This document shows positions 430 to 34,832 of a DNA stretch of 34,963 nt, in pieces (the first letter of the stretch is position 1; each line of letters starts with the position of its first letter). Below the pieces are notes generated by a model. The model searched no databases. It saw nothing but the letters and a program-made list of their open reading frames with translations, and was not told where the DNA came from. The DNA is from Guillardia theta CCMP2712 (lineage: Eukaryota > Protista > Cryptophyta), in the NCBI RefSeq assembly GCF_000315625.1, contig NW_005434546.1:9677-44639 (forward strand), given 5' to 3'. The position numbers were made by a program, and so were the translations under genes.

Positions 430-3560
<3,131 letters not shown>

Positions 3561-3604
3561 AAGCTCTCTCCTCCTCCTCCTCTCTCCTCTCTCTCTCTCT
3601 CCTC

Positions 3605-4465
3605 NNNNNNNNNNNNNNNNNNNNNNNNNNNNNNNNNNNNNNNNNNNNNNNNNNNNNNNNNNNNNNNNNNNNNNNNNNNNNNNNNNNNNNNNNNNNNNNN
3701 NNNNNNNNNNNNNNNNNNNNNNNNNNNNNNNNNNNNNNNNNNNNNNNNNNNNNNNNNNNNNNNNNNNNNNNNNNNNNNNNNNNNNNNNNNNNNNNNNNNN
3801 NNNNNNNNNNNNNNNNNNNNNNNNNNNNNNNNNNNNNNNNNNNNNNNNNNNNNNNNNNNNNNNNNNNNNNNNNNNNNNNNNNNNNNNNNNNNNNNNNNNN
3901 NNNNNNNNNNNNNNNNNNNNNNNNNNNNNNNNNNNNNNNNNNNNNNNNNNNNNNNNNNNNNNNNNNNNNNNNNNNNNNNNNNNNNNNNNNNNNNNNNNNN
4001 NNNNNNNNNNNNNNNNNNNNNNNNNNNNNNNNNNNNNNNNNNNNNNNNNNNNNNNNNNNNNNNNNNNNNNNNNNNNNNNNNNNNNNNNNNNNNNNNNNNN
4101 NNNNNNNNNNNNNNNNNNNNNNNNNNNNNNNNNNNNNNNNNNNNNNNNNNNNNNNNNNNNNNNNNNNNNNNNNNNNNNNNNNNNNNNNNNNNNNNNNNNN
4201 NNNNNNNNNNNNNNNNNNNNNNNNNNNNNNNNNNNNNNNNNNNNNNNNNNNNNNNNNNNNNNNNNNNNNNNNNNNNNNNNNNNNNNNNNNNNNNNNNNNN
4301 NNNNNNNNNNNNNNNNNNNNNNNNNNNNNNNNNNNNNNNNNNNNNNNNNNNNNNNNNNNNNNNNNNNNNNNNNNNNNNNNNNNNNNNNNNNNNNNNNNNN
4401 NNNNNNNNNNNNNNNNNNNNNNNNNNNNNNNNNNNNNNNNNNNNNNNNNNNNNNNNNNNNNNNNN
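3605..4465. other. Assembly gap (861 N)
   Basis: Run of N. Confidence 1.
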
Positions 4466-4517
4466 CCATCTGAGGGGGAGGCGCGTCAGAGGAGGAGGAG
4501 TTGTAGATGATACGGCA

Positions 4518-6078
4518 CCAGTGAAGTATTTGATCTTCTTTGCACCGGGTGTGAGAACGAAGAAGTACGGGATCGTCTCTGTCAGGACGAAGTCAGCAAG
4601 CACAAACTCTCCCAAACTCCCATTATCATCGTTGAGATGATTATCAGCATCTCCATCATCGTCTTCGTCAACATCATGTCGAACAACTCCGTCTCCCAGC
4701 ATCATCAGCACCATCAGCACCATCATCATCTACATCATCTATCATCTACAAGCTCCATCATCATCTGTCACCATGTAGCTGCGGGCAGCAGAACCATCCT
4801 CTCTTGATGGTCCGAGGAGGCTGAGGCTTCTGCAGCCCCCAACTCAGCGCTTGCAAACCTCCACCGCACAGCAGCACCTCGTTCATCTCAAAGTGAAGCT
4901 CCACCTTAGACATCTGCCAGAGCCAAAACATGGTTGTCGGAGCACGAAATCACAAACATCACACTATCACCCCCTGCGGCCCAACCAGCGACTGCTCGAT
5001 CGAACAAGTTAGAGGAGGCGCAGCATGGGGCAAGCGCAGCAGAGATTTTGAAGCACCTGCTTCTTAGGCGTGCGGACTTCATACCATCCCCCCTCCTTCT
5101 GCTCTGATAGTGCTCGTGTCAGCAACCTCTGTGATAGGCTGCAAAGGTCTCTCCATGCTCACCAGCATGTGTTTCTATCCTGCTGATCGGGACCACGACA
5201 TTTCCTGCGAGGTTGACGTGTGAGTGACAACGAGGAGGAGGTTGCGAACTACCGAGAACTTCGTGCTCTCCGGACAAGACACTCTCACTTAAGAGCCTTA
5301 CAACCACAAAGTGATGCTCCGTCTTTGCGAGCTCCTCGATCTGCGAACAGAGACGACCGTCGGTCACCAACCACGTTGCAAATAGTCTCAGCATCAACTT
5401 CGACAGAAATGAAAGCAAACATCACAAATGCAACTACAAATATAACTACAACTACATATGCAACTGCAACTGCAACTGCAACTGTATCTGCAACTGCAGC
5501 TGCAGCTGCAGCTGCAACTGCAACTGCAACTGCAACTGTATCTGCAACTGCAACTGCAACTGCAACTGCAACTGCAACTACATGTGACATAAGTCTCAGA
5601 CAATTAGCTGTTGTCACCTGGAAGCTCTCGTTCCATGACGGATGCAGACCGCTTGCGGCAATCACGGTAGAGTAAGAGAACGCACACTTCCCAGGCTCGT
5701 GTTGTCGTTCCCTGCAAATGACCTGCACAAGACAGCGAAATCCTCTTCCCTCTCCCACGTCCTGTCCTCTCCCTGTCAGCTCCTCTCATACATGGAAAGA
5801 TCGTTCCCTACAGGCAAGTTGCGGGCTTGCCGCACCACTACTGTCAGAAGGCGATTGCTCTGCACAAATATGAGCGACTGCTATTGCACCGCGAAAGAGG
5901 ATACCGTCATTCCTCGAGGTTTACCATGGCATCGTGCAAACGCAACACAAATCTTGTTTCTCTTTCTGGTCAGAAGCGTGAGAGGTCGCAAGGGTGTGAA
6001 GATATTGATAATCAGGGATTCAATCAGGAATTCACCACCACCAAATAGTTTGGTGTAATGTTGAGGATTATCATGCAT
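4518..6078 (-). CDS. C2-domain + PH-like domain protein, N-terminal exons (start codon uncertain)
   Basis: Spliced C2 motifs: SNRLLTVVVRQARNLP ... TVIAASGLHPSWNESFQ|IEELAKTEHHFVVVRLLSESVLSGEHEVLG|NVVVPISRIETHAE|QKEGGWYEVRTPKKQ|SLVGPQG|MSKVELHFEMNE. These are followed by the PH-like KPQPPRTIKRGWFCCPQLHE|TIPYFFVLTPGAKKIKYFT. Confidence 0.75.
5460..5579 (+). repeat. (GCAACT)n microsatellite inside a C2-gene intron
   Basis: Direct reading. Confidence 0.9.
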
Positions 6079-11760: not shown

Positions 11761-14700
11761 TCAAACCCCTCGAGCTTCGTCCAGGTAATAGTCCATGGCC
11801 GAAAACAGCTCTGATGATTGCTCTTCCACCACCTGCCCTCCTACCTGCTCTCCCCTTCCCCTTTTCCTCTCCTCCTCTTTCCTCATCTTCATAGCGACTT
11901 TGCTTGCCGGCCCCGCAGCCTTCGCCTGCTGCTCGACTCGTCTCCGTCCTCCTTCCCTCTCCAGCACAGCCTTCACAATCCGTTTCCCCTGCTCTTTCCC
12001 CCTCACTTCCACCATAGCCTCCTCTTCCTCGTCCTCCTCGTCCTCGTCCTCGTCCTCCTCGTCCTCGTCCTCGTCCTCCTCCTCCCCGCTATCTCCCGAG
12101 TATCTAGGGTTCAGCAAGGATGCAGGAAAGAGACTTCGAGCCCGCGCCATCGCCTGCTCGCTGACGAGGGACAGGGAGACTTTACCGACAACCTCCTGGA
12201 CAAACGAGATGAGGAGGAGGAAGACAAAGTCGGGGAGCAGAAGAGGAGAGGAGGAGAACGAAGATAAATGATGATGCTGATAATGACGATGATGATGATG
12301 ATGATGATGATAATGATGATAATGATGATGATGATGATGACGACGACGACGACGACGACGACGATGATGATGATGATGATGATGATGAGGAGGATGAGGA
12401 TAAGGATGAGGAGGAGATGGAGGAGGAAGAAGAGATTGAGAAAGAGGAGGAAGAGGAGACAGTGTTGGTGATCATCAAGAGGTTGGTAGGAATTGCTTGC
12501 CTCATCTTCGCCGACGAAAGAAGCGAGAAAGAGTTGACCATCCTGATGAGGAAGAAGTGAGCGAGAGCGAAAGAAAGAACGACAAAGATGGAGATGAACG
12601 AAGGATGCGATGCAGGAGCAGAGGGCGGAGGAAGATGAAGAGGAGGATAAGGATGAGGATGAGGATGAGGATGAGAAGGAGGAGGAGGAGGATGAGAAGG
12701 AGGAGGAGGAGGAGGAGGAGGAGGACGTGCAAGAGAAAGTTGGGGTGGATGAGCAAGACAGGCAGACCGAGAGCAGGAGCAGAAGTATGGGAATGGGGTA
12801 ACGGATAGAAGGGATAAGGGCAGATGGCGTAGGGAGAATAGAGAAGGAGGAGGAGGAGGAGGAGGAGGAGGAGGAGGAGGAGGAGGAGGAAAAGGAGGAG
12901 GAAAACCTGCACGTGCTGCAGGCTCACTCGGCAGACCCCAAGCTCAACATCTTCGAGCTCCTCGTCGTCGTCAGCTTGTCCGAAGAGAAGGACGTCGAGC
13001 GAAGGATGACCTGGAAGGTGTGAGGAGAAGAGGGAGGAGGGAAGAAGACGGGAGGGCAAGTCGAGGAGAGCAGAAGAAACGAGTAGTGGAGGACAGGTGA
13101 GGCGGCAGGGAAGGAAGCGGGAGGGAGCGGGAGGGGGCAAGAGGATAGAAGAGAGCGAGGAAGGGGGAGAGAGAAGAACGGGAAGAGAGGAAGGAAAACC
13201 TGAGGAGGAAGAGTTCGAGGAGGAGAGAGCGGAGGCGAGAGGGAGGAAATAGGACTGATCGTCTTGCGGGTCTAAAGAGAACTTGACGGAGTGACTGAAG
13301 ATCATCTCGTGCGCCCTTGGAAGAGATGCGCTGGATGGCAGACGTTAGGAGGGAAGAAGGGTAGGCAGGGGATTAGGAGAGGGACAAGGAGGACTGAAGG
13401 AGGAGAGTAGGAGAGAAGAACAGCGGAAAAGAGGAGCAGAGGAGGGGAGCAGAGGAGGAGAAGAAGAGAGGAGGACAGGAGAGAAGAAGATAAGAGAAGA
13501 AGCAAAGAGGATGGGAGAACAGGGACGACAAGCAATAGGGACGAGGATGTGGAGGACATGGGGTAGAACAGATATGTCCAACTCACCTGGCCTTGTCGTA
13601 AATTCTCATTTCATCCACCTCTTCCTCATCCTGGTCATCCGACATGTCAGGTCCACAACCGTCACAAGCCGATCGGTATTACCCCGGCAATAAAGACAGC
13701 GGATACGAACAAGTTGGGAAAGCGCCGGAGGGAGTCAAACTGACTCTCTTCAAGCTCAACTCGGTCGATCTTGACGCTGACATGTTTGCTGCGGACACGA
13801 ACATCAGTGGACGATATCGCGTCCTCTACCACTCTACTGCTACTCCATCACAACTACTCGCTGTTTTCATCAACAACTCACCTCCTATCGAACTCTTCGT
13901 CTTCATCGCACGGTTCGCCGTACATGTCATCGATAGACTGCAATCTTTCTCAGCAACCTTCTCTCAGCAGGGGCACCAGCTCCTCACCATGTCCGGCAGG
14001 CGGCAGGAGCCCTCGGGCATGACCACCGGAGCTCTCTGCGCCTTCATGGCATCGTGTATGTCTAGCAAAGATGAACCCTCGAAGCTCTCTCGTACACTCT
14101 CCTGCTCCTGCTCCTGCTCCTGCTTCTGCTTCTGCTGCTGCTGCTGCTGCTCCTCCTCCTCCTCCTCCTGCACAAGTTGGTTTTCTTTCTCCCTTGTGGT
14201 CTTCCCTCCCTGAACATGGTTCGGGAAGGAGTGCAAGCACGAGCTGAGAAGTGCGCGAACTCTCAGGAGGCGGTCAGAAGTCTGATGTCCTGCCGTTTCC
14301 TGTCCTCCTCTCGCAGATTTCCCGCAAAGGTCAACAAGCCCCGGAATCCATTCGTCCTCGTACCTCCCCTGCAGCAGGAAAGAAACGACCTCCTCCTCCG
14401 CATACTCCACTGCTCTCCTCAGGCACGCCAACGTCTCAGCCCCTCCTGCTACAAGAATGTCCCGCATCCTGTTCAGGCGCTCCTCTTTCACATCCCCTTC
14501 GCTGTACATTTCCTCCTCCTCCTCTTCCTCCTCCTCTCCCTCTTCCTCCTTCCTCCTCCTTTGATTCTCCTCCATGGCACGGTATCGCACCAAAGAACAA
14601 ACGACGCCCATGGCAGTGATCGCAAGTTCCCTCGTCTTGTTATCGCCTTTCCATCTTTCTTCCTGCTCCTCCTCCTCCTCCTCCTCCTCACAGAGAATTT

Positions 14701-17700
14701 CCGTCAGCCAGGGTTCACCAGTGAAGCATGAAGACGGGATACGGGCATTGACGTCCACTCCAGATATGACGTACCGGTGTACCATATCCTCCTCCTCTGC
14801 CCCTACTGCCTGAACGAAGCCTATCGTGTCCTCCGCCATGCTCCTGATCTCGATTCGCTCCGCCACATGCTCGTACAGATCCTCCACGCCCTCCTCCCTC
14901 TCCTCCTCCCTGTACACACCGACGTTGTTCATCCTCCTTCTGTCAATCCCCTTCCCCGTCCTCTTCCCAAACCTCCACAATCCATCATAGATTCGCTCTT
15001 TCCTCTCAAACAACACCCCCCTCCCGTGCTGTATTCCCTTGCTCCATTCACCCTGGTAGACCTCTCCTGTACCATACACCATTCTCCCCTCTCCCTCCGG
15101 CATCCCGTCCTCAAACCTCCCTTCGAACTCGTTCCCTCCCTTCCTCCACTTCCCCTGTCCTTGCTGAACTCCTCTCCTCCACTCTCCTTCATAGCTTGAC
15201 CCGTCTCCCCACGTCTTCCTCCCCCACCCATGAGGCAGGTTCTGCACAAACTCTCCGTCAAACGTCTCCTCTCCTCCTCTCCCTGTCAGCCTTCCCTTCC
15301 CCTCTGCCATCCCGTTCCTGAAGCTCCCAACGTAGACCTCCCCAGTCTTGTGTACCCACCTCCCCTCCCCATGACACTGACCGTCCAAGAACTCCCCCTC
15401 ATACGAGGTCCCATCAGGAAACCACATGCTTCCTCTCCCCTCCGCTCTGCTCCCCTCCACCTCTCCCTCGTAATGCACACCGGAGGCCAGCTCGGCCTTG
15501 ACTACTTTCCTCTTCTCCTTCATCCATCCATCTTCCTGCTTGTCCTCCGATCTCACAGCCTCCCTCCTCCTTCCTCTTGACCTGCTCCAGTACGGGAGGA
15601 GGGAGGGCCGCGGGATTCCGAACCGCTCCAGGTCACCCCCTGTGATGATGCGCCGAGAGGTCAACAAAGCAGCAACGACTTCCCACTGAGTAACGGTGGA
15701 GGAGGAAGGGAGGTGAAGCTCGCGCAGACGATGCAGGCATCCGTCCTTGACCTGCACCCGCTCGTAGTGTTTGCGGTACCGCATGAGAGAGGAGCGGGAT
15801 ATAACCTCCTCCTTGTACCCCTTCGCATCTTTCCCTCCTCCCTTTTCCCCCTTCCTCTGCTCCATCTCCTTCCTCCCCTCCTTTCGCCCCGCCGTCGCTT
15901 CCTCCTCCCTGCCCCCGCTCCTCGTTGACGCGTCTGCCTCCTCCTTGGCGACGCGAAGAATGCTGCCTTTCTCCTCCTCCACCCTCTGCAGCCTCCAAGA
16001 TCGCCCCGAGGAGAGGGAGATTATCACCCAGGAGCCCACGGGACCTCGAAGCAGCGTCTCCACGTCCTCAGTCTTGAGATTCTTGGAGGAGAACGCAAGG
16101 GCGAATTCTCCCTCCTCCTCCTTCTTCCTCTCCACGTCTCGGACATGATCGATCACGTCCCCAACCCTCAGCTTCCCTTCAGCTGGAGAGTTCCTGGAGA
16201 TCTTTCGCACAGTCATCCTCCCTCCTGCATCCTTGCCCACCGAGATCCCAACCCCTCCGATCAACGTTTTCTCTTTCTTCACCAGGTCAGCCCTGGCAAT
16301 CCGAGGAGGAGCGGACGACTGCAGGAGGGACTGGGCTCGCTCCTGCATCCTTACAAGCCGCTTCTTCTCCATCTCCTCGTACCTCTCCACAGCCTTCCCC
16401 TCCTCGCTAGGGGCCTCCTTGTCTGTCACGGTGAGCACCTCCGGCACTGAGACCCAGTCCTGTCCATTGAGAGTGACGAGGAGGTACGCTGGCCCAACGA
16501 ATCTCAGCCTTGGCACTTCCCCATGGAAACATTTCTGTACGCTGAAGTACTTGAGGCGGAAGTCAAAGGACTGCGACTGATCGCCAGGAGCATCGCCGTC
16601 GTCCTGAACCCTCAGCTTGACAATCCTGCCCATGAGGAGTGGAGAGGAAAAGAAATTCTCTCCCTCGATCTTTACCTTCATCCCGCCCTGGGCCGAGATG
16701 ACCCGGGGCTTGGCTCTCAGCGGGAGTAGGGGAGGGTGCGAGGTGAAGTCCTCCTCCCCGCAATCCATCCAGCTCATCCCATCGTCAAAGCTCGCCTTGA
16801 CCTTGAGCCTGCAGTTCCCGTAGCTCTCTAGCTCCATCAGCCTTGGGGTAACGCACTTCATCTCGCTGCTTGAGAGATCCGACGGAAGAATCTGAACCCT
16901 CCTATCGTATCCCCTCCCTTGGAACCTTATCCACGCCGAGCATCCCTGCCGTGGATGAAAGTTCTCCCCTCTGACCGTGAAGCTCCAGCCTCCCTCGCAG
17001 CTGGCAAGGAGGGGAGAGAAGGAGCTAACCACTGGCTTTCCCCTCACCTGAATCTTCTTGAAGCAGGGAGGGGACATGGTTTTCCCGCCGTCAAGGGAGA
17101 CCCTGACCTCGAGGTCGACATCGTTGACGAGCTCACAGTTGGGAATCTGGAACGAGACTATCTCCTTCCCTCTCTCTGCCGATGCCTTGATCGTATGATT
17201 GTTGATCACGGTCCCGGTCTTGGTATCGCATTCGCTCAGGTTAACGACAACGTCTCCTGTGTCAAACAGCGGGTAACCAGTGCAGTGCACCCTCACAGTT
17301 GGCTCCATGTGGAAGAACAAGAAGTCTGGCTCGACGTTCACAAGCAGAGGGTTCTCCCAGAATGTCACGCTCGCCAGCCCCATCTTCTTCCTCAGATCCT
17401 TCAGTCGCTCCTTGACCGCTTCCTTCTTGTTGGCTGCAGTCTTCAGCAGGGAGTGCTCCTCCTTCCAGTTCAAGTACTCCCTGTCGAAGTCGGCATCGTT
17501 CAGGCTCAGCTCGAAGTGGACTTGTCCCGTGACAGAGAGGCTGCCGACGTCTGCAAGTAGCTGCTCCCCAAACATCTGCCCCTTGACTGTCTCCAAGGTC
17601 TCCTCCTCCTCCGTCTTGAGACGCACGCGCAGCTGCATCTTCCTCCAGATCTCTTTCTCCGCATCCGAGATCTCTGCATCCTCGTAGTTCAGCTGCTCGA

Positions 17701-18105
17701 GATGAAGCACCAGCATCGTTATCGTATTGGCCTGCGCGAAAAGCTCAGAGGTAGAAGGGACTTGTCAGTTACAACCGCTGAAGCTTTCACAAAGTCCGGC
17801 TTCGCCGCCACGACAGAGGGCTGGTGATAGAACAGGAAGTGGCAAGAGCCAACCTCTGCCTTGTTCACCATCAATCTTATCTTCGTTAGCTCCCGCTTCC
17901 CCCACATCGGCGAGGTACATTCGCAGGAAGCTGAGGACTTGGTCCTTCTTTTAAACTGCGCCACCACGGGGATTCGCCGCAGGGGAGTGCAGAAGACGAC
18001 CTGGAAGGTCGTGCCCTCATTCCAGCTGTCCTCGTTTGTCAGCGTTAGCACAACCTTCGTCCCTCCCGTGGACGGGCCAGAGGTCGGGGATATCGAAAGT
18101 TCCAT
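11761..18105 (-). CDS. Large multidomain protein: IPT/TIG repeats, PDZ, 8 MORN repeats, ankyrin-like segment, RPGRIP1 C-terminal-like C2 domain, acidic tail
   Basis: IPT/TIG: SISPTSGPSTGGTKV, SSFSPLLASCEGGWSFTVRGENF, AKPRVISAQGGMKVKIEGENF. PDZ: GGVGISV..VRKISRNSPAEGKLRVGDVI..LLRGPVGSWV (~16015-16260). MORN: YEGE..G..HG.G x8 (~14950-15490). Ankyrin-like: GVDVNAR and LRRAVEYAEEEVVSFLL. Downstream spliced exons give a C2-like domain. Start and last exon are approximate. Confidence 0.85.
12268..12390 (+). repeat. (GAT)n/(GAC)n intronic microsatellite
   Basis: Direct reading. Confidence 0.9.
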
Positions 18106-28176: not shown

Positions 28177-28440
28177 ATGCCTCTTCAAGACACCAACGAG
28201 TCTCCAACCGAAGTCGACCAGGAACTTGATGCCATCGAGCAGGCGTTGGAGCAGTTCCTGATGCCAATGGCACTCTATCAACCAGAAGAGCTCTGGTCGA
28301 ACTTCTTTTGGTCTACGGGCACAAACGAAGGCTGGGACACTCCGCTCGGCTGGATTGTTCAGCACGATGACTGGGTCACGCCGTTCAACTGGGAAGCTCT
28401 GACGCAAGAGCACCCATCACCAACTCTGCAGGTTGGATGA
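28177..28440 (+). CDS. Possible small acidic Trp-rich hypothetical protein or exon
   Basis: Non-repetitive ORF MPLQDTNESPTEVDQELDAIEQALEQFL..W-rich; no family recognised. Confidence 0.25.
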   Translation: MPLQDTNESPTEVDQELDAIEQALEQFLMPMALYQPEELWSNFFWSTGTNEGWDTPLGWIVQHDDWVTPFNWEALTQEHPSPTLQVG

Positions 28441-28644
28441 GTGGAATCAGGTAAATCGACAATCAGATTAATCGCGGGGACAGACGAAAACCCCGCAGCA
28501 GTGAGACAAAACGGTTCGCATCACCATTGAAGGATCTAGCGGGGTAGTCACTAGGACCCCGTAACTCGTGACGATGTAATATACAACACTTGCAAGATGC
28601 TCACCCGACTCGCCGGAGGTTTACACCGCTGCGATGTTCAAGTT

Positions 28645-30635
28645 TCAAAAGTCAGGGATCGCGTCGACAAGCTCCGGCATGTCGATGAATGGATTTCGAT
28701 TCTTCTGCCATCTGCTCCATCTCAGATCGTCAAAAGTTCAAAGGGAAGACTTACGTGTAAATCTTTTCATTCCTCTGTTTCTCGCGTTCACTCACAGGAT
28801 CTTTCTTGTGCCATGACCTGTTCTGCCTCATTTTTGATTCCTTGCATGTTTTCTTCAAATACCTCAGCATGTCTTGGTATGTCTTCGATATCTTGTTTTT
28901 GTTCACCAGGCTCCTTTGGCAACATTGAAACTCCCCTTCGTACCTGCGCATTGTGTTGTCAGCGGCTGCCCAAAACGACTGTTCGAAATCAGACACATCA
29001 CCTCACGCTGACGTAAAAATATGCTCGTGCAAGGTCTCCCTGTTACATCCGAGTCATATTCTGTTTTTGGTTGTGTTTCAACTTTGTAACACCTTCACGT
29101 GATCTGGTGGCTCGAAACATTTGTCTTCAACCCTTCTCACTTCCTTTCCTGGTTGAGTCCCACAAATAACAACCACACAAAGACGGGAGGAGGAGATACC
29201 GTACAGTCCTTTCGTTCCGCTGAGCACTTTCAGTTTGACACTGTCCATTTTCCTGAGGTTCACATTGTCCTGCCTTCAGTCTCAGGAGAACGTTCACAGG
29301 CGTCACGTGATCATACTGACCAAGATGTTTGACTGGTGGATGTAGACTTCACGACCATCCTTCAAAGTTGCAAAACCGAATCCTGCAACTCTTGTAAGGC
29401 GCCTTCTGCAGCATCTGAATCTGAAGAATCATACACCTTTTTCTTTGTTAAAAAACTTCACGGTACCCGGGACTTTTCGATCATCTTTGTCTTGGTCCAA
29501 CAAGCCTGACTGTCCCTTTTGTCAAAGGGGCAGGAAGATGAAAATGTAAGAGCGTGACCTTACATTTGCCGAATTTCCCACCGCTCTTGGTTGTGTACGA
29601 AACGTCTGCACTTGTTTCAATTTCGTTTCATCTCCGTGAAACAGGTTTGCCTTCAACAACGGCCAGGGGATAGTTGCTTCTCTTCTTGTTGACGAACCTG
29701 TCCGACCGTTACATGGCAGGAAGCAACAGTATTGCTCTTACCCATCCACGAGATAAAGCGCGAACAGGTCTGTAGATGCGGCTGAAAATATGTCCTCAGC
29801 ATGGTACTGGTATGAGCTGAAGCAACGTTTACCTCCTCCTTCCTCAAAGCCTCCCCACCACGACCTGAAGTGAAACTTGGGTCAGTAAGGCTGTCTTCGA
29901 GCATACAACTTGTTTCGGTCACTTTGGCCAGGCATGCTCTCGATTGTAGCAGAAGTTTTCTCGCTCGATCACCTGGACGAGTGATGTCAGCCCGGGTTGA
30001 TGGATGAAAGGACTGAACCGACTTTGTCGCATCTGTCTGTGTAGATCCTCCAGCACTTTCCGGTGTAGACATCTGCTACTGAGTTGGGTTGACAACCATC
30101 CTGCCCCTTTCATCACGAAGAATCAAATTCGACGCCTTCTACAACAACCTGCCCTCCATCGATGTCTTCTAGCGCCTCCCAAACTCTTTGGTAGCTCAGT
30201 GGCACCTGTTGACCGCGTTCAAAGGGAGAATTGTACAAAACTCGCTCTACATGCTTCGAGATAACAGCGTGCAATGCAGACTTCAGCTCTTGACCTTGGT
30301 GTCAGTCAGAGCAATAACAAGTACTCAGCCTGCATGTCCTCTTTGTTTCCCTACCTTTCCTCTTGGAGATGGACTCTCCGTAGTACCCTACCGACTGATT
30401 GCCGCCATTAAGCTGAGATGCTGGTCAAACGTATCGAAGAAAGATGAATTCATTGAAGAAAGATGAAACTACTCACAGTAAACTTCTTCTCCACGTTCGT
30501 TTTGTAGAAGACCGCGGTCGCTATTGCACACAGCACGGCTGTATTCCAGAGTCATTACAAACTGAAAGCCTTGACACGAAGCAGCAACATGATATGAGCA
30601 AAAAACTTCCATGATAAATGCCACTTGCGGATCAT
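28645..30635 (-). CDS. Endonuclease I-family (EndA/Vvn/Bsn, His-Me finger) nuclease with an inserted cold-shock domain; about 18-20 short exons
   Basis: In-phase splicing gives GYYGESISKRKGQELKSALHAVISKHVPLSYQRVWEALEDID..DVYTGKCW..CYNREHAWPKSWWGG..TDLFALYLVDGFVNKKRSNYPLAVVEDVSYTTKSGGKFGKC-[CSD]-EDKCFEPPDHVKGDLARAYFYVSVRY..MLRSWHKKDPVSEREKQRNEKIYTWQKNRNPFIDMPELVDAIPDF* (TGA 28645-28647). The start codon and signal peptide are tentative. Confidence 0.9.
29129..29476 (-). other. Cold-shock domain (OB fold) coding segment within the nuclease gene, spread over 4 exons
   Basis: KVPGTVKFFNKEKG|FGFATLKDGREVYIHQSNIL|DNVNLRKMDSVKLKVLSGTKGLYG|KEVRRV contains RNP1 (KGFGF), RNP2 (VYIH) and the C-terminal G.KG..G..V pattern. 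Confidence 0.9.
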
Positions 30636-31100
30636 GACGTGAGGCGGGTCAAATTGAAAACACGACGAAAACAATACGAACATCGAGGTCATGTCCAACA
30701 CCACGACTTACGACAAAAAGATCTCCGACAAGGTCAAAGACGAGGTGAAAGACAACATCGTGGTCAAGGCTCAAGATCAAAATCATCCTTGAAACCAAAA
30801 CAAGGACTACAGCATGAACAATGGCAAGACCAACAACAACAACAACAACGACCATGTCAATAACATTTCTGATGATGCAATCTCTGTCAAGCCTTGCGGC
30901 TGCATCAGTATCAGAAGCAATCATCCATACAAAATCAGGTTGGCCAAGTTCAAGAACACACAAAATCAGATGTAAGGCCATCCAAGACCGAGCACACAGA
31001 GAAAAGAAGGAGCATGGCCAATAACCACATCGACATCAAGGATGCCCTGGACAAATCTATTGGACCAACTCCAAGATCAACAGCGGTCAGAAATGGCTCG

Positions 31101-31369
31101 ACATCATGGTCCACAACATCATGGTCAAGAACATCATGGTCAACAACATCATGGTCAAGAACATCATGGTCACCAACATCATGGTCAACACCATCATGGT
31201 CAAGAACATCATGGTCACCAACATCATGGTCAACACCATCATGGTCAACGTCAACAGCATCATGGTCATGGCCACCAACATCATGGCAGCAACATCATGG
31301 TCAACAACATCATGGTCAACAACATCATGGTCAACAACATCATGGTCAACAACATCATGGTCAACAACA
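31101..31369. repeat. 15-bp minisatellite (ACATCATGGTCAACA)n, about 17-18 degenerate units
   Basis: Direct reading; translates as QHHGQ / NNIMV / STTSW. Confidence 0.92.
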
Positions 31370-31845
31370 AGGTACACGAGGAGGCCATCAACAAGGCAAC
31401 AACAAAACGAGCAACACAATCAAGTTATCAAGATCAAGTCTTGATGGAGTGGACGAAATATCATGGTCGATGAACAAACTTTCCTGCAATGGCGCAAAAT
31501 TCCCATCGGAGACCTGCCTGCTTCCTGCTAGTGCTGAGGATAAGGATGAAGAACAAACATCTCCCTCCTCCTCTCTTGCCTCTCGTTCTTTGGTCTTCGC
31601 ATCGTCGCTCCTCCTCGCTCCTCCTCCTCACCCGCTCCCCGCCATGTCCGCCACCATGGATCTGACCTTGTCGTGCATGCCCATGTAGATCTCCTCGCCT
31701 TTTATCGCCAGGAATTGGTTCGTGGTAAACTACCCCCCCTATCCACTACCCCCTATATGTCAGCTAAGTACCCCCACATTGGGAAGGCAGCCTGCCCGAC
31801 AAAAAAGATCCCCTAGGTAGGAATACGCTCCACAGCATGGCCATG

Positions 31846-31901
31846 TCCTCCCGCTCCTCCCCGCTCCTCCCCGCTCCTCCCCGCTCCTCCCCGCTCCTCC
31901 C
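31846..31901 (+). repeat. (CTCCCCGCTC)n 10-bp tandem repeat, about 5 units
   Basis: Direct reading. Confidence 0.9.
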
Positions 31902-32097
31902 TACCATGCCTCGCCCTCCCCTCCTCCCTTGTCCTCCTATCAGTCAACATGGCACAGTCGCCTTGTGAGCTACAAGATGTATTTTCTTGGTAAGAATACT
32001 ACAATGATGGCATGTACACAACATGGGCAGGAGGAGGAGGGTGAGAGTGAGGAGGATGAAGAAGCAGGAGAAGAGCAAGGAGGGAGAAAAATTGTCG

Positions 32098-34832
32098 TCA
32101 CTCAAGCTTCATGGTCTTGCAGCATCTCCGCATCCTTCGCCTCATTCTCGCCTCGCAAATGTTTCTAGCCGACCATGAATGCTGAGCAATGCCCTGAGAG
32201 AACGTCACCATCCTCCTGCATGGCGGCAGCAAGTCGCTTGTCACCTCATCGTCTCCTCATTGCGGTCTCTCAGGGTCGAAATCTCCTTCCTCACCTCCGA
32301 CATGAAGTTCTCGAACGCCTCGTTGGTCGCCTCCTGCGCCGAGCTCTCGCTGATCTGCTTCTCCATGGACTGCCTTCTCTGCTCGGCAGCAAAGACTCCT
32401 GATGATCGAGAACGGTGAGAAGGAGGGCCAGGAGGGAGGAGGCGAGGGGGAAGGAAGTCGGGTGACAAGAGGAGGAGGAAGAAGAGAAGGATGAGAAGGA
32501 GGGAGAAACACAAAGATGAGGAGGAAGATGAAGGAAAAATCCAATTTTCTTACCGACGGGGAAGAATCCTGTATTGTTGGCGACGATACTTCGGATGACA
32601 CTGGCAAGACATCAGCAGGAAATCAGCAGGAGATCAAGAGGGTGGAGGTAGAGACCTTCTCTCCGTCCCGTTGTAGTCGGCAGGGTCCTTGTCCAGGAGG
32701 TGCTTGAGGTACAGCAGGTACCGTATTGCGTACTTCCCTCCCCTCCTCGTCTCCCACTCTCCAGCATACTTGCTGTGTACCCAGTCAGTGCTCGAGCTCC
32801 TGACCCTCCTCCACCCCTCCACTCCCGGTCTTGGAGACCCCTGTTTCATCCTATCCCTATCACTATAGCCGACATGCGCTTGTCATTGTCAGCGCTGTCC
32901 CTCTCTGCCACCAATCTTCGTCTTCGTTCTTATCCCCAAAAACATCTTCCACATTATGCCATCATCTTCGTCCTCGTCCTCGTCCTCGTCCTCCTCGTCC
33001 TCGTCCTCGTGCCCTCTCCCCATCCTCGCACCCCATCCTCCTCCTCCTCCATCACCTGAACCGGTGACGCTCCAGCCCTGTCACGAAGCACTTCGACTCC
33101 AACTCAAGGGTGGCGGCTGTGGCCTTGCTGCGAATCTCCGCAAACGCGTCGAAGATTTGACCCTGCATGACCGGCTGGAGAAGCATGTTCCAGAACACGA
33201 GCCCTACTAGCACGTAGATAGTCCTCCACTGGTACCAGAGGTCCTCCCAGACGACGAGAGGAGGATAGGTCCACATGCTGAACTGACCGAGGACCTGGAG
33301 GAAGCGAGGTTCAGGTGATGGNNNNNNNNNNNNNNNNNNNNNNNNNNNNNNNNNNNNNNNNNNNNNNNNNNNNNNNNNNNNNNNNNNNNNNNNNNNNNNN
33401 NNNNNNNNNNNNNNNNNNNNNNNNNNNNNNNNNNNNNNNNNNNNNNNNNNNNNNNNNNNNNNNNNNNNNNNNNNNNNNNNNNNNNNNNNNNNNNNNNNNN
33501 NNNNNNNNNNNNNNNNNNNNNNNNNNNNNNNNNNNNNNNNNNNNNNNNNNNNNNNNNNNNNNNNNNNNNNNNNNNNNNNNNNNNNNNNNNNNNNNNNNNN
33601 NNNNNNNNNNNNNNNNNNNNNNNNNNNNNNNNNNNNNNNNNNNNNNNNNNNNNNNNNNNNNNNNNNNNNNNNNNNNNNNNNNNNNNNNNNNNNNNNNNNN
33701 NAAGTGAGTTACAAGTGATCTCAACTCACCGTGGTGATGTCTCCTCTGAAAGAGTCGTAGATGTGTTTTGACACGCACTGAAAGGTAGCACGTGAGGAAA
33801 ACAACAAAAGGGGACTAGGTGGAGAGGTCACAGAGAAAGATTCAACAGGCAAGCAAACAAGAGCGAGAAAACAGTAAAAAGAACAAAGCAAACAAAACTT
33901 CTGAATACAACAGAGACACAAGAAAAGACAAGTCCTATGGAGGAAGAAGTTGAGACCTGAAAGGGACTGTGGCAAGACTCGTCCTCAATAATGGCCGTCT
34001 GTGAGAAGTAGGCGTATGTATAAACCCCTGAAGCAATGAGGAACAAAACTCCAACAGTAAACGATCGGAGCTGCTCGGGTTGTTAGCCACATCCCGCACA
34101 ACACACTTGCTCTTTTCTCACCAGGTTCGGAGCTCCGACGTACAAGCTCTTGAGCACAACACGACCTCCTGTTCATCCATGAGATGAGTTTTGCTCAAGC
34201 TATACGGGAAGAGAGCGAGAGCGAGAGCGAGAGCGAGAGCGAGGATGAGAGGGAGAGAGGGAGAGAGGGAGAGGGAGAGGAAGAGGGTTAGGGTGGGAGA
34301 GAGAGGAAGAGGGAGAGGATGGGGGAGGGAGAGGAAGAGGGTGAGGGTGAGCGAGAGCGAGGATGGCCGGGAGAGGCAAGACAGGAGGGTCACCGCTCAT
34401 GCGCAGATAGTCCATCATGCTAGCGACGTAGTAGAGAGGAGAGGACAGGAGGCCGAGGAGGGAGATGATGACGAGAGCCGTCTGGTACAGCCCCGGCCAG
34501 CACCTCATGGCAACTCGGTACCAGGTGAACGAGTCCCCGGCGCTGACGAACTTGTTGGCCGCCAGCTCGGGAGGAGGAGGCATGCTCTCAAGGTACCTCC
34601 TCCCCCTCTGCCGCAACTTTGCGGCGCCTCCCTCGGCTGACTGCGCGTCCTGAGCTGGGGTGATCTTGCTGTCGAGGTCAAAGGAGATTGGGATGCGGCT
34701 GAACAGGATGTCACGGGCCCTCGTGCTGGGGGCCTCGAGGCCCAGCTCGTTGGTTCCCTTGGACTGGTTCCAGAGCTCCAGGGGAAAGTCCAGGACGATG
34801 TAGGCGAGGAGGTTCAGGATGGATAAGAGCAC
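32098..34832 (-). CDS. 3' part of an IP3-receptor/ryanodine-receptor-like channel (TM region, pore, C-terminal coiled coil); 5' part outside the window
   Basis: Spliced: LYQTALVIISLLGLLSSPLYYVASMMDYLRMSG|GRVVLKSLYVGAPNL|LRSFTVGVLFLIASGVYTYAYFSQ..CHSPFQ|CVSKHIYDSFRGDITT|VLGQFSMW..WRTIYVLVGLVFWNMLLQPVMQGQIFDAFAEIR..LESKCFVTGLERHRF|..YLLYLKHLLDKDPADYNGTERS|VIRSIVANNTGFFPVG. This parallels the IP3R/RyR motifs G.IID.F..LR, KCFICG, and KD.T.Y.G.E..V..WFP. Confidence 0.85.
33322..33701. other. Assembly gap (380 N), apparently intronic
   Basis: Run of N; the flanking exons join in phase 0. Confidence 1.

What the first reader, a model, noticed from the sequence alone, without database searches (positions are those of the whole stretch)
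28645..30635. Endonuclease I-type nuclease with a complete cold-shock domain inserted inside its catalytic domain
Seen: joining many 25-100 nt exons gives an uninterrupted Endonuclease I reading frame. The catalytic NREH (EH at 29934-29939) and metal-binding N..RSN are intact, followed by FEP.D..KGD.AR..FY, WH..DPVS..E..RN and NRNPFID. Between ..GKFGKC and EDKCFEP.. sits a full cold-shock domain of ~65 aa with RNP1 KGFGF and RNP2 VYIH, in frame and interrupted by ordinary introns. Established: this position is a short loop in bacterial Endonuclease I proteins. CSDs bind and melt ssRNA/ssDNA, and the CSD-nuclease combinations I know (RNase II/R, Dis3) use a different catalytic fold and are not insertions. 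Inference: this is a hybrid enzyme whose OB fold delivers or unwinds single-stranded substrate next to a His-Me active site, possibly for extracellular nucleic-acid or phosphate scavenging, or for defence. The two Cys flanking the insert could staple it with a disulfide. I do not know of a description of this architecture, but I cannot search.
Basis: partly seen in the sequence, partly recalled or inferred. Interest (0 to 1): 0.92.

Follow-up and report, generated by a model that had tools for sequence, protein, structure and literature searches.

The report
Secreted-type nuclease with nested cold-shock domain
A gene of the alga Guillardia theta really does encode an Endonuclease I-type nuclease with a complete cold-shock (single-strand nucleic-acid-binding) domain spliced into a loop of its catalytic domain. 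It is transcribed, and conserved in a few related uncultured eukaryotes, but nobody has studied it.

Summary
The gene lies on the minus strand of Guillardia theta CCMP2712 and is the public hypothetical protein GUITHDRAFT_146537 (XP_005822311.1, UniProt L1IGF5). Spliced transcript contigs from three studies carry all nuclease and cold-shock-domain (CSD) exons in one molecule: 17 short introns of 43-64 nt, one of them GC-AG.

Pfam finds Endonuclease_1 (1e-37) split at profile position ~142 by a CSD (5e-11). About 45 homologues have only a 6-10 residue loop there, flanked in the closest ones by the same two cysteines.

Two further lineages, from at least 8 environmental assemblies, carry the same insertion. 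On nuclease-only columns the three form one clade (100/99). The CSD evolves under purifying selection (dN/dS about 0.1) while its linkers are free.

A model of the orthologue shows both folds, matching Vvn/EndA and CspA/B. The catalytic His and the metal-binding Asn are intact.

The likely role is a tethered binder of single-stranded substrate on a secretory-pathway non-specific nuclease; this is inferred, not shown. No paper describes the architecture, though databases auto-annotate both domains. It is a new variant of a known kind, of moderate interest.

The parts
31487..31641 (-). 5' exon. Its 3' end at about 31487-31484 is fixed by RNA. Its upstream end is not mapped; one contig carries 155 nt 5' of exon 2. 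The nuclease reading frame stays open through it and encodes a hydrophobic segment (CLFFILILSTS) and the start of a second (FCAIA...). There is no in-frame ATG unless a further intron exists.
   Evidence: Loose ends of transcript contigs in 3 runs at 30541 map uniquely to 31487-31516. Translation; start-codon enumeration.
30539..31486 (-). Intron 1, about 945 nt. Its boundaries can shift by 3 nt (CAG on both sides). The best reading is a non-canonical GA..AG intron.
29559..30538 (-). Exons 2-11, the N-terminal part of the nuclease domain: 30538-30477, 30412-30355, 30294-30251, 30205-30149, 30100-30023, 29972-29923 (NREH), 29864-29833, 29781-29742 (TDLFALYLVDG), 29697-29651 (FVNKKRSN), 29605-29559 (GGKFGKCK). 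The introns are 44-64 nt and GT-AG, except 29606-29650, which is GC-AG.
   Evidence: Joints. Introns and translation. The two unlisted joints (30295-30354, 30413-30476) are inferred from depth, frame and the public model P0002.
29093..29509 (-). The insert: a linker (SGLLDQDKDDRKVP) plus the cold-shock domain, in exons 29509-29437, 29382-29321 (RNP1 KGFGF, RNP2 VYIH), 29269-29200 and 29148-29093. The last exon also encodes the return to the nuclease (VEDKCFEPPDHVK).
   Evidence: Pfam CSD 5.3e-11 at residues 205-263 of P0002. The exon-level CSD hit has E = 0.0017.
28648..29039 (-). Exons 16-19, the C-terminal helical part of the nuclease: 29039-29002 (GDLARAYFYVSV), 28943-28863, 28817-28755 (WHKKDPVSEREKQRNEKIY), 28711-28648 (WQKNRNPFIDMPELVDAIPDF plus the TGA stop at 28650-28648).
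   Evidence: Pfam Endonuclease_1 exon-level hits and the whole-protein hit.
28300..28647 (-). 3' UTR. Transcript contigs run continuously to at least 28300.
   Evidence: tables 2 and 8. Raw stranded RNA reads of X16 lie here with the first mate on the + strand.

Best explanation
This is a genuine, expressed nuclear gene of Guillardia theta (GUITHDRAFT_146537). It encodes one polypeptide: an Endonuclease I-family (PF04231, His-Me/beta-beta-alpha-metal) non-specific nuclease. The short hairpin loop between ...G-x-C and C-F-E-P (Pfam profile position about 142) has been replaced by a bacterial-type cold-shock domain on flexible linkers.

Shown here:
- The architecture and its transcription.
- Its single origin, and its retention under purifying selection in a small clade of eukaryotes.
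- An intact catalytic His (NREH) and metal-binding Asn (VN..RSN), and intact RNP1/RNP2.

Inferred:
- The protein enters the secretory pathway. The evidence is the N-terminal hydrophobic segments, the many conserved Cys pairs as in disulfide-dependent bacterial Endonuclease I, and classical signal peptides on the CSD-less relatives.
- The CSD works as a tethered single-strand-binding module. It would capture ssRNA or ssDNA, or frayed and melted regions, and hold them beside the active site. That would raise affinity or bias the enzyme toward single-stranded substrates, much as the N-terminal CSDs of RNase II/R do for a different catalytic fold.
- The biological role (nucleotide/phosphate scavenging, organelle or extracellular nucleic-acid turnover, or defence) is open.
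For: - Transcription and splicing: single spliced contigs in 3 runs from 3 studies span the nuclease and CSD exons, with an open frame. Skipping the CSD would shift the frame.
- Domains: Endonuclease_1 1.1e-37 and CSD 5.3e-11 on P0002. PF04231 is split at profile position about 142 around the CSD in P0004, P0087 and P0150.
- Insertion: about 45 homologues have 6-10 residues at that site. The closest ones (for example Pygsuia biforma P0005) keep both flanking Cys.
- Conservation: the same insertion occurs in two other lineages, from ENA and JGI assemblies.
- Single origin: one clade with 100/99 support on nuclease-only columns.
- Selection: CSD identity of 46-54% is similar to the nuclease parts at 52-64%, and the linkers are unconserved. 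dN/dS is 0.10-0.15 for the CSD against about 1.3 for the linker.
- Fold: the AF2 model of P0004:76-420 has pLDDT 82, with a five-strand barrel between two nuclease strands. It matches CspA/B (TM 0.82-0.87) and Vvn/V. cholerae EndA (TM 0.58-0.67).
- Catalysis: residues invariant across 48 homologues (Y, E-H, D, N, R, K-G) are all present.
- Family biology: members are secreted or periplasmic, disulfide-dependent and sequence-independent, and include the RNase Bsn (PMC5714182).
Against: - There is no biochemical or localisation data.
- The start codon and N-terminus are unresolved, so secretion is not demonstrated.
- Two peripheral aromatic positions of canonical CSPs (the F after the RNP2 His, and the loop F/Y) are lost in all three lineages (residue roles recalled from memory). 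Binding may therefore be weaker or differently shaped.
- The AF2 confidence of the CSD is only 66-77, and its orientation relative to the active site could not be examined because no coordinates or PAE were returned.
- The selection estimates rest on few substitutions.
- One environmental population carries a TAG nonsense allele inside the gene, so the gene is dispensable at least there.
Confidence: 0.6

Rival explanations
1. The architecture is as above, but the CSD is not a substrate feeder. It would be an anchoring or regulatory module: holding the enzyme on a nucleic-acid-containing matrix (extracellular DNA/RNA, a cell-surface layer, an organelle nucleoid), or occluding the active site until nucleic acid binds.
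For: Long disordered linkers, 15 to about 35 residues and of variable length, suggest a loosely tethered domain rather than a fixed composite binding cleft. Bacterial family members commonly carry surface-attachment domains such as fn3, LTD and Big_2.
Against: RNP1 and RNP2 are conserved, and the insertion sits inside the catalytic domain rather than at a terminus. That placement keeps the CSD within reach of the active site in all lineages. Nothing tested here tells the two readings apart.
Confidence: 0.2
2. The enzyme works inside a cryptophyte compartment reached through the ER (periplastidial space with the nucleomorph, plastid, or vacuole/lysosome) in RNA or DNA turnover, not outside the cell.
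For: N-terminal hydrophobic segment(s) followed by further sequence before the YY...LSY start of the domain. In cryptophytes, ER entry is also the route to the complex plastid (established knowledge, not tested here).
Against: No targeting prediction could be run and the N-terminus is unresolved. The CSD-less eukaryotic relatives have plain signal peptides directly before the domain.
Confidence: 0.15
3. The nuclease moiety is catalytically dead and the protein is only a nucleic-acid binder.
For: Clade-specific substitutions near the active site (NREHAWP rather than NREHSWP; DLFALYLVD rather than DLFHxxPxD). A paralogous domain in a giant G. theta protein has lost NREH.
Against: All residues invariant in 48 homologues, including the general-base His and the metal Asn, are kept. 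The H-to-A change also occurs in CSD-less members such as P0007. The nuclease parts have dN/dS of 0.1-0.4.
Confidence: 0.04
4. The architecture is a gene-model or assembly artefact, or the CSD belongs to an alternative or separate transcript.
For: The public model is wrong in its middle and at its 5' end. The contigs are assemblies and can miss rare isoforms.
Against: The same spliced contig appears in three studies. An uninterrupted 420-aa ORF with the same nested order lies on intron-free environmental genomic contigs. Exon-skipping is barred by the frame arithmetic.
Confidence: 0.01

Closest known systems
Endonuclease I family (Pfam PF04231; His-Me finger group 9): Vibrio vulnificus Vvn, V. 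cholerae/E. coli EndA, B. subtilis RNase Bsn
   Same: Pfam match. NREH general-base His and VN..RSN metal Asn. FEP..KGD.AR and NRNPF motifs of the C-terminal helical domain. Predicted fold matches 1OUP/1OUO/2G7E. Cys-rich, with a hydrophobic N-terminus like the secreted or periplasmic members.
   Different: It is eukaryotic and intron-rich, and a whole CSD replaces a 6-10 residue hairpin loop inside the domain. The partner domains listed for this family are terminal fn3, LTD and Big_2, with no CSD (PMC5714182). phmmer does not reach the solved structures from this subfamily.
CSD-less eukaryotic and uncultured homologues (for example Pygsuia biforma EP00033_P000105 = P0005; P0006; P0013)
   Same: 34-56% identity on BLASTP local alignments that cover 26-88% of the query. 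Same Cys pattern, including the two Cys that flank the insertion site. Same C-terminal ...DF end.
   Different: They have 7-9 residues where the G. theta clade has linker-CSD-linker. They carry NREHSWP and DLFHxxPxD instead of NREHAWP and DLFALxLVD.
Bacterial cold-shock proteins (CspA/CspB/CspE; nearest found: P0148, 66 aa)
   Same: Pfam CSD over 62 of 66 profile positions. RNP1 KGFGF, RNP2 V(Y/F)(I/V)H. 52% identity to P0148. Model TM of 0.82-0.87 to CspA/B structures.
   Different: The domain is not free-standing: both of its ends are joined to a nuclease. Two peripheral aromatic positions are lost.
RNase II / RNase R / Rrp44(Dis3): CSD + RNB exoribonucleases
   Same: CSD(s) combined with a nuclease in one chain. 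The CSDs bind single-stranded substrate and guide it to the catalytic centre, which is the working model proposed here.
   Different: The catalytic fold is different (RNB). The CSDs are N-terminal and tandem, not nested. These enzymes are cytoplasmic or nuclear and processive 3'-5' exonucleases. No RNB match was found here.
[quoted passage not shown]
   Same: A CSD-like domain joined to a nuclease-containing system that is predicted to address RNA.
   Different: These are prokaryotic defence operons. The CSD is fused to a GTPase rather than inserted in a nuclease domain, and the nucleases are PD-(D/E)xK or HEPN.

Membership tests
Endonuclease I (PF04231) | Profile match above the curated cut-off | tested here: met
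   130.4 bits (cut-off 25), E = 1.1e-37 on P0002. 115.5 bits on the orthologue P0004, in two stretches.
Endonuclease I (PF04231) | Catalytic His at the end of the first beta strand (..EH) and metal-binding Asn on the core helix (N..R.N) | tested here: met
   NREH at 29945-29934 and FVNKKRSN in exon 29697-29651 of the RNA-supported model. E, H, N and R are invariant in 48 aligned homologues. Their assignment to Vvn H80 and N127 is from memory of the Vvn paper cited in PMC5714182.
Endonuclease I (PF04231) | Vvn/EndA fold: His-Me finger backed by a C-terminal helical domain | tested here: met
   Tested on the orthologue only. The AF2 model of P0004:76-420 matches 1OUP, 1OUO, 2G7E and 2VND with target TM of 0.58-0.67 and probability 1.00. 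The corrected G. theta protein itself could not be submitted because it has no reference.
Endonuclease I (PF04231) | Export to an oxidising compartment, with disulfide dependence | tested here: inconclusive
   Hydrophobic N-terminal segments and conserved Cys pairs are present. The start codon is unresolved and no signal-peptide predictor was available.
Endonuclease I (PF04231) | Mg2+-dependent sequence-independent cleavage of DNA/RNA | not testable with these tools
   This needs a biochemical assay.
Cold-shock domain (PF00313) | Profile match above the curated cut-off over nearly the full domain | tested here: met
   42.7 bits (cut-off 27), E = 5.3e-11, profile positions 3-64 of 66. The orthologues score 38.6, 33.6 and 40.3 bits.
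Cold-shock domain (PF00313) | RNP1 (K/R-G-F/Y-G-F) and RNP2 (V-F-V-H) motifs | tested here: met
   KGFGF and VYIH in G. theta; QFGFV / KGFGF and VFVH / AFVH in the orthologues.
Cold-shock domain (PF00313) | Five-stranded beta-barrel (OB fold) | tested here: met
   Tested on the orthologue. Five strands at residues 177-241 of the model, pLDDT 66-77. TM of 0.82-0.87 and rmsd 1.4-1.7 A to CspA/CspB/CspC.
Cold-shock domain (PF00313) | Binding of single-stranded DNA/RNA | not testable with these tools
   This needs EMSA, fluorescence titration or similar.
RNase II/R (CSD + RNB) | RNB catalytic domain | tested here: not met
   Pfam finds only Endonuclease_1 and CSD. The comparison is of working principle only, not of membership.

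The most novel reading that the evidence does not exclude
A small eukaryotic clade (G. theta plus at least two uncultured lineages) has converted a secreted, duplex-tolerant His-Me nuclease into a single-strand- or RNA-directed enzyme by nesting a bacterial-type CSD next to the active site. This would be the first natural OB-fold-in-His-Me nuclease. The CSD and catalytic cleft would form a composite substrate path that changes specificity or allows activity on structured RNA or DNA, for example in the cold or at very low substrate concentration.
Probability: 0.35. Interest if true: 0.6.

Novelty: new variant of a known kind. Interest (0 to 1): 0.5.

Why it matters
Both domains are textbook families. 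A complete domain inserted inside a catalytic domain, kept under selection in several lineages, is an uncommon natural experiment in enzyme engineering.

It gives a clean test of whether a tethered single-strand binder changes the affinity, specificity or temperature range of a non-specific nuclease. That is of interest for nuclease reagents, and for understanding how marine and freshwater protists recycle or destroy nucleic acids.

It also corrects the public gene model. The annotated protein lacks the metal-binding motif only because two exons were mis-called.

It does not open a long-standing question, and its distribution is narrow.

Tried and rejected
- Six-frame Pfam search of the whole genome missed this gene because every exon is under 28 codons. 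It found only a degenerate paralogue and other CSD genes.
- Single exons against Pfam gave only weak partial hits.
Pfam and AF2 were therefore run on the public model P0002 and on the natural orthologue P0004. The spliced protein was analysed only in local scripts.
- The library-wide phmmer search with an exon-intron-exon ORF recovered P0002. It also returned two long repeat proteins (P0001, P0003; PAN and Calx-beta/cadherin-like), which I judge spurious; they probably matched the intron-encoded stretch.
- A profile search with the three nested proteins was swamped by low-complexity words: 8000 candidates, and only one new fragment.
- The CSD-only search returned a single candidate, so the origin of the CSD could not be traced beyond 'bacterial-CSP-like'.
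- The ESM Atlas has no large cluster with this architecture.
- Adding free CSD sequences to the alignment misaligned them, so they were dropped for folding.
- In the first tree one long-branch sequence (P0139) intruded into the clade. It was left out of the final tree.
- Enumerating possible 5' introns gave too many solutions to fix the start codon.
- A rival idea was considered and rejected: that the in-frame TAG in L007/L008 reflects a reassigned codon. Near-identical contigs L011/L012 have CAG there, so it is a nonsense allele.
- The search of earlier findings returned nothing.
Full report
**What is in the sequence**

The window is eukaryotic. It is contig C128:9677-44639 of an 87.1-Mb, 669-contig assembly. 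An exact protein look-up identifies the organism as Guillardia theta CCMP2712.

I built a splice model by eye and then tested it against public data.

**Transcript evidence**

Eleven RNA-type runs hold about a quarter of the words of 28600-30700. That is the share expected for a spliced message of a gene that is about 40% exon.

I laid three of these runs (three studies) and one raw RNA-seq run on 28300-30900. In each of the three assembled runs, one contig or a pair of overlapping contigs skipped 43-58 nt at 15 listed places; two more joints were not listed. After the stated offsets every skipped piece is GT..AG on the minus strand, except 29606-29650, which is GC..AG.

These contigs carry the four CSD-encoding exons (29509-29437, 29382-29321, 29269-29200, 29148-29093) between the nuclease exons. 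Contigs that lack 17 introns can only come from spliced RNA.

The few stranded raw reads lie with the first mate on the + strand. That fits a minus-strand RNA in the usual library type.

The joined exons give one open frame ending in ...NRNPFIDMPELVDAIPDF-TGA (28650-28648), followed by a 3' UTR of at least 348 nt.

The three exons that encode only insert sequence sum to 205 nt, so skipping them would break the frame. Contigs cannot exclude rare isoforms.

- Exon 2 (30538-30477) is not preceded by the ATG at 30635. In all three runs the contig continues 80-155 nt into sequence that maps uniquely to 31487 onward. Intron 1 is therefore about 945 nt and, in its best reading, GA..AG.
- The nuclease frame stays open through this 5' exon and encodes hydrophobic stretches (CLFFILILSTS; FCAIAAVLCAIATAVFY). 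It has no in-frame ATG unless another intron exists, and enumeration gave many possibilities. The N-terminus is unresolved.
- RNA places the intron after GKFGKC at 29510-29558, giving ...GKFGKCK|SGLL....

**The public gene model**

A library-wide phmmer search with an exon-intron-exon ORF spanning the CSD/nuclease junction (window:29081-29275:-) found a 359-aa protein that is 100% identical over the coding parts.

It is XP_005822311.1 / EKX35331.1 / UniProt L1IGF5. NCBI calls it 'hypothetical protein GUITHDRAFT_146537' and UniProt calls it 'CSD domain-containing protein'.

Its middle section (…GGGSSTRREATIPW…NSAN) and its N-terminus disagree with the RNA contigs. It reads through introns in a wrong frame, and so it lacks TDLFALYLVDGFVNKKRSN…GKFGKCK.

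Even so, Pfam scores it as Endonuclease_1 at 1.1e-37 (two stretches) and CSD at 5.3e-11 (residues 205-263, profile positions 3-64 of 66).

**It is an insertion**

In an alignment with about 45 family members, the segment from after G-x-C to C-F-E-P is 6-10 residues long everywhere except in the CSD-bearing proteins.

The closest CSD-less proteins keep both cysteines around a 7-9-residue loop (for example GKC-KTDVALT-CFE). These are Pygsuia biforma P0005, P0006 and P0013, which reach 34-56% identity on local alignments covering 26-88% of the query. That fits a disulfide-closed hairpin into which the CSD was placed.

Pfam places the break at profile position about 142 on both sides.

**Conservation**

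Only a few other database proteins combine PF00313 and PF04231:
- P0004: 420 aa, 39% identity to P0002 on BLASTP (41% in the three-way alignment), 24 member sequences.
- P0087: a 197-aa fragment.
- P0150: a close relative of P0004.

P0004 is an uninterrupted ORF on a 3.75-kb genomic contig with CA microsatellites. The P0087 gene lies on genomic contigs with introns elsewhere in the gene.

A scan of JGI metagenomes added two contigs of the P0004 lineage (100% and 93% identity). It also added three of the P0087 lineage.

With the insert removed, a maximum-likelihood tree of 48 proteins puts the three CSD-bearing lineages in one clade with 100/99 support. In an earlier run a long-branch sequence intruded; I left it out and say so. 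This points to one insertion event followed by retention.

Several lines point to selection on the CSD:
- CSD identity between lineages is 46-54%, comparable with the nuclease parts at 52-64%.
- The linkers differ in length, from 15 to about 35 residues, and in sequence.
- Between close alleles, dN/dS is 0.10 and 0.15 for the CSD.
- It ranges from 0 (no nonsynonymous change) to 0.41 for the nuclease parts.
- It is about 1.3 for the linker.

These estimates rest on few substitutions, so they are indicative only.

Two ENA samples carry a TAG where near-identical JGI contigs have CAG. This is a nonsense allele in one population.

**Fold**

The corrected G. theta protein has no reference, so I folded the natural orthologue P0004:76-420 with a 48-sequence alignment.
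- Mean pLDDT is 82 and pTM is 0.73.
- The nuclease parts mostly score above 90.
- A disordered linker runs from residue 148 to 175.
- A five-stranded barrel (residues 177-241, pLDDT 66-77) sits between two nuclease strands (138-142 and 253-256).

Foldseek matches the model both to cold-shock proteins (target TM 0.82-0.87, rmsd 1.4-1.7 A) and to Vvn and V. cholerae endonuclease I (1OUP, 1OUO, 2G7E; target TM 0.58-0.67 across the whole chain).

By sequence alone, only CSPs are reached in the PDB. No coordinates or PAE were returned, so I could not test whether the RNP face looks into the active site.

**Active-site and binding residues**

The residues invariant in 48 homologues (Tyr, Glu-His, Asp, Asn, Arg, Lys-Gly) are all present in the RNA-supported G. 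theta protein.

The clade-specific DLF-A-L (His to Ala) also occurs in CSD-less members such as P0007, so it is no sign of inactivation.

In the CSD, RNP1 and RNP2 are kept. Two peripheral aromatic positions of canonical CSPs are lost in all three lineages; this comparison uses the CspE/CspC alignment, and the residue roles are from memory.

The nearest free CSD found is a 66-aa bacterial-type protein (P0148, 52% identity) that shares VKFFNKEKGFGF exactly.

**How it most likely works**

Established for the family: these are secreted or periplasmic, disulfide-dependent, sequence-independent DNA/RNA endonucleases, and the family includes the RNase Bsn (PMC5714182). Established for CSDs: they bind single-stranded DNA or RNA.

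From the nested position, the flexible linkers, the retained RNP motifs and the selection on the insert, I infer a tethered single-strand-binding module. It would capture or hold ssRNA/ssDNA next to the His-Me site of an enzyme that passes through the ER.

I put the architecture at about 0.95 and this mechanism at about 0.45-0.5. The rivals are an anchoring or regulatory CSD, an organellar rather than extracellular site of action, a dead nuclease, and an artefact. They are listed with their tests.

**Comparison and novelty**

The enzyme is a member of PF04231 and carries a member of PF00313. It works like RNase II/R in principle (a CSD guiding single strands to a nuclease), but it shares neither the catalytic fold nor the domain order with those enzymes.

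The 2017 survey of His-Me nucleases lists fn3, LTD and Big_2 as partners of Endonuclease_1, and no CSD. CoCoNuT systems fuse CSD-like folds to McrB GTPases, not into a nuclease.

Searches by accession, and for the two domains together, found no paper. The held library is incomplete, so this is absence of evidence.

Both domains are already auto-annotated on a 2012 database entry, and each family is well known. I therefore rate this a new variant of a known kind. It is real and tidy, worth a biochemical look, and of moderate rather than high interest.

Noticed in passing
window 29559-29864 and 30539-30770 (public model XP_005822311.1): The public gene model GUITHDRAFT_146537 is mis-spliced. Its residues ~145-195 read through introns in a wrong frame and omit the exons encoding TDLFALYLVDG / FVNKKRSN / GKFGKCK. 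Its first exon (around 30711-30770) is not the one used in the RNA contigs.
   Followed up: yes
window 30539-31486 and 29606-29650: Two non-canonical introns lie in one gene: a GC-AG intron of 45 nt, and a ~945-nt first intron whose only near-canonical reading is GA-AG. The junction is ambiguous by a shared CAG.
   Followed up: partly
window 30610-30817 (next to an (AAC)n-type repeat at 30818-30900): Separate transcript contigs (X1 record 2, X2 record 5) cover this stretch inside intron 1 of the nuclease gene. They could be another small gene, possibly on the + strand (an ATG ORF starts near 30692), or an alternative first exon. A 264-aa + strand ORF at 30894-31688 has no Pfam match.
   Followed up: no
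L001 = G000:C35:124605-127916 (match at C35:126105-126416, minus strand): A second Endonuclease_1 domain in the same genome (66 bits) sits inside an apparently intron-free open frame of 13,956 aa. It has lost the NREH motif (TNLWSRS in its place), so it looks like a degenerate nuclease domain in a giant protein.
   Followed up: partly
L007:3139-3141 and the same place in L008; compare L011 and L012: An in-frame TAG lies right after the CSD (GLVGK*VEVL) in two ENA samples. Near-identical JGI contigs have CAG (Q) there. This is a nonsense allele segregating in an uncultured relative.
   Followed up: yes
window 13964-17716 (minus strand): An uninterrupted 1250-aa ORF with MORN repeats (6.9e-22) and a TIG/IPT domain. 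It is a long intron-free gene beside a gene with 18 introns.
   Followed up: no
window 3001-5000 and 33001-34000: AT-rich islands (GC 0.28-0.34) in a window that otherwise has GC 0.45-0.66. Overlapping long ORFs on both strands at 3180-4729 have no Pfam match.
   Followed up: no
window ~31850-31910 (minus strand): A tandem GGAGCGGGGA-type 10-mer repeat lies just upstream of the 5' exon of the nuclease gene.
   Followed up: no
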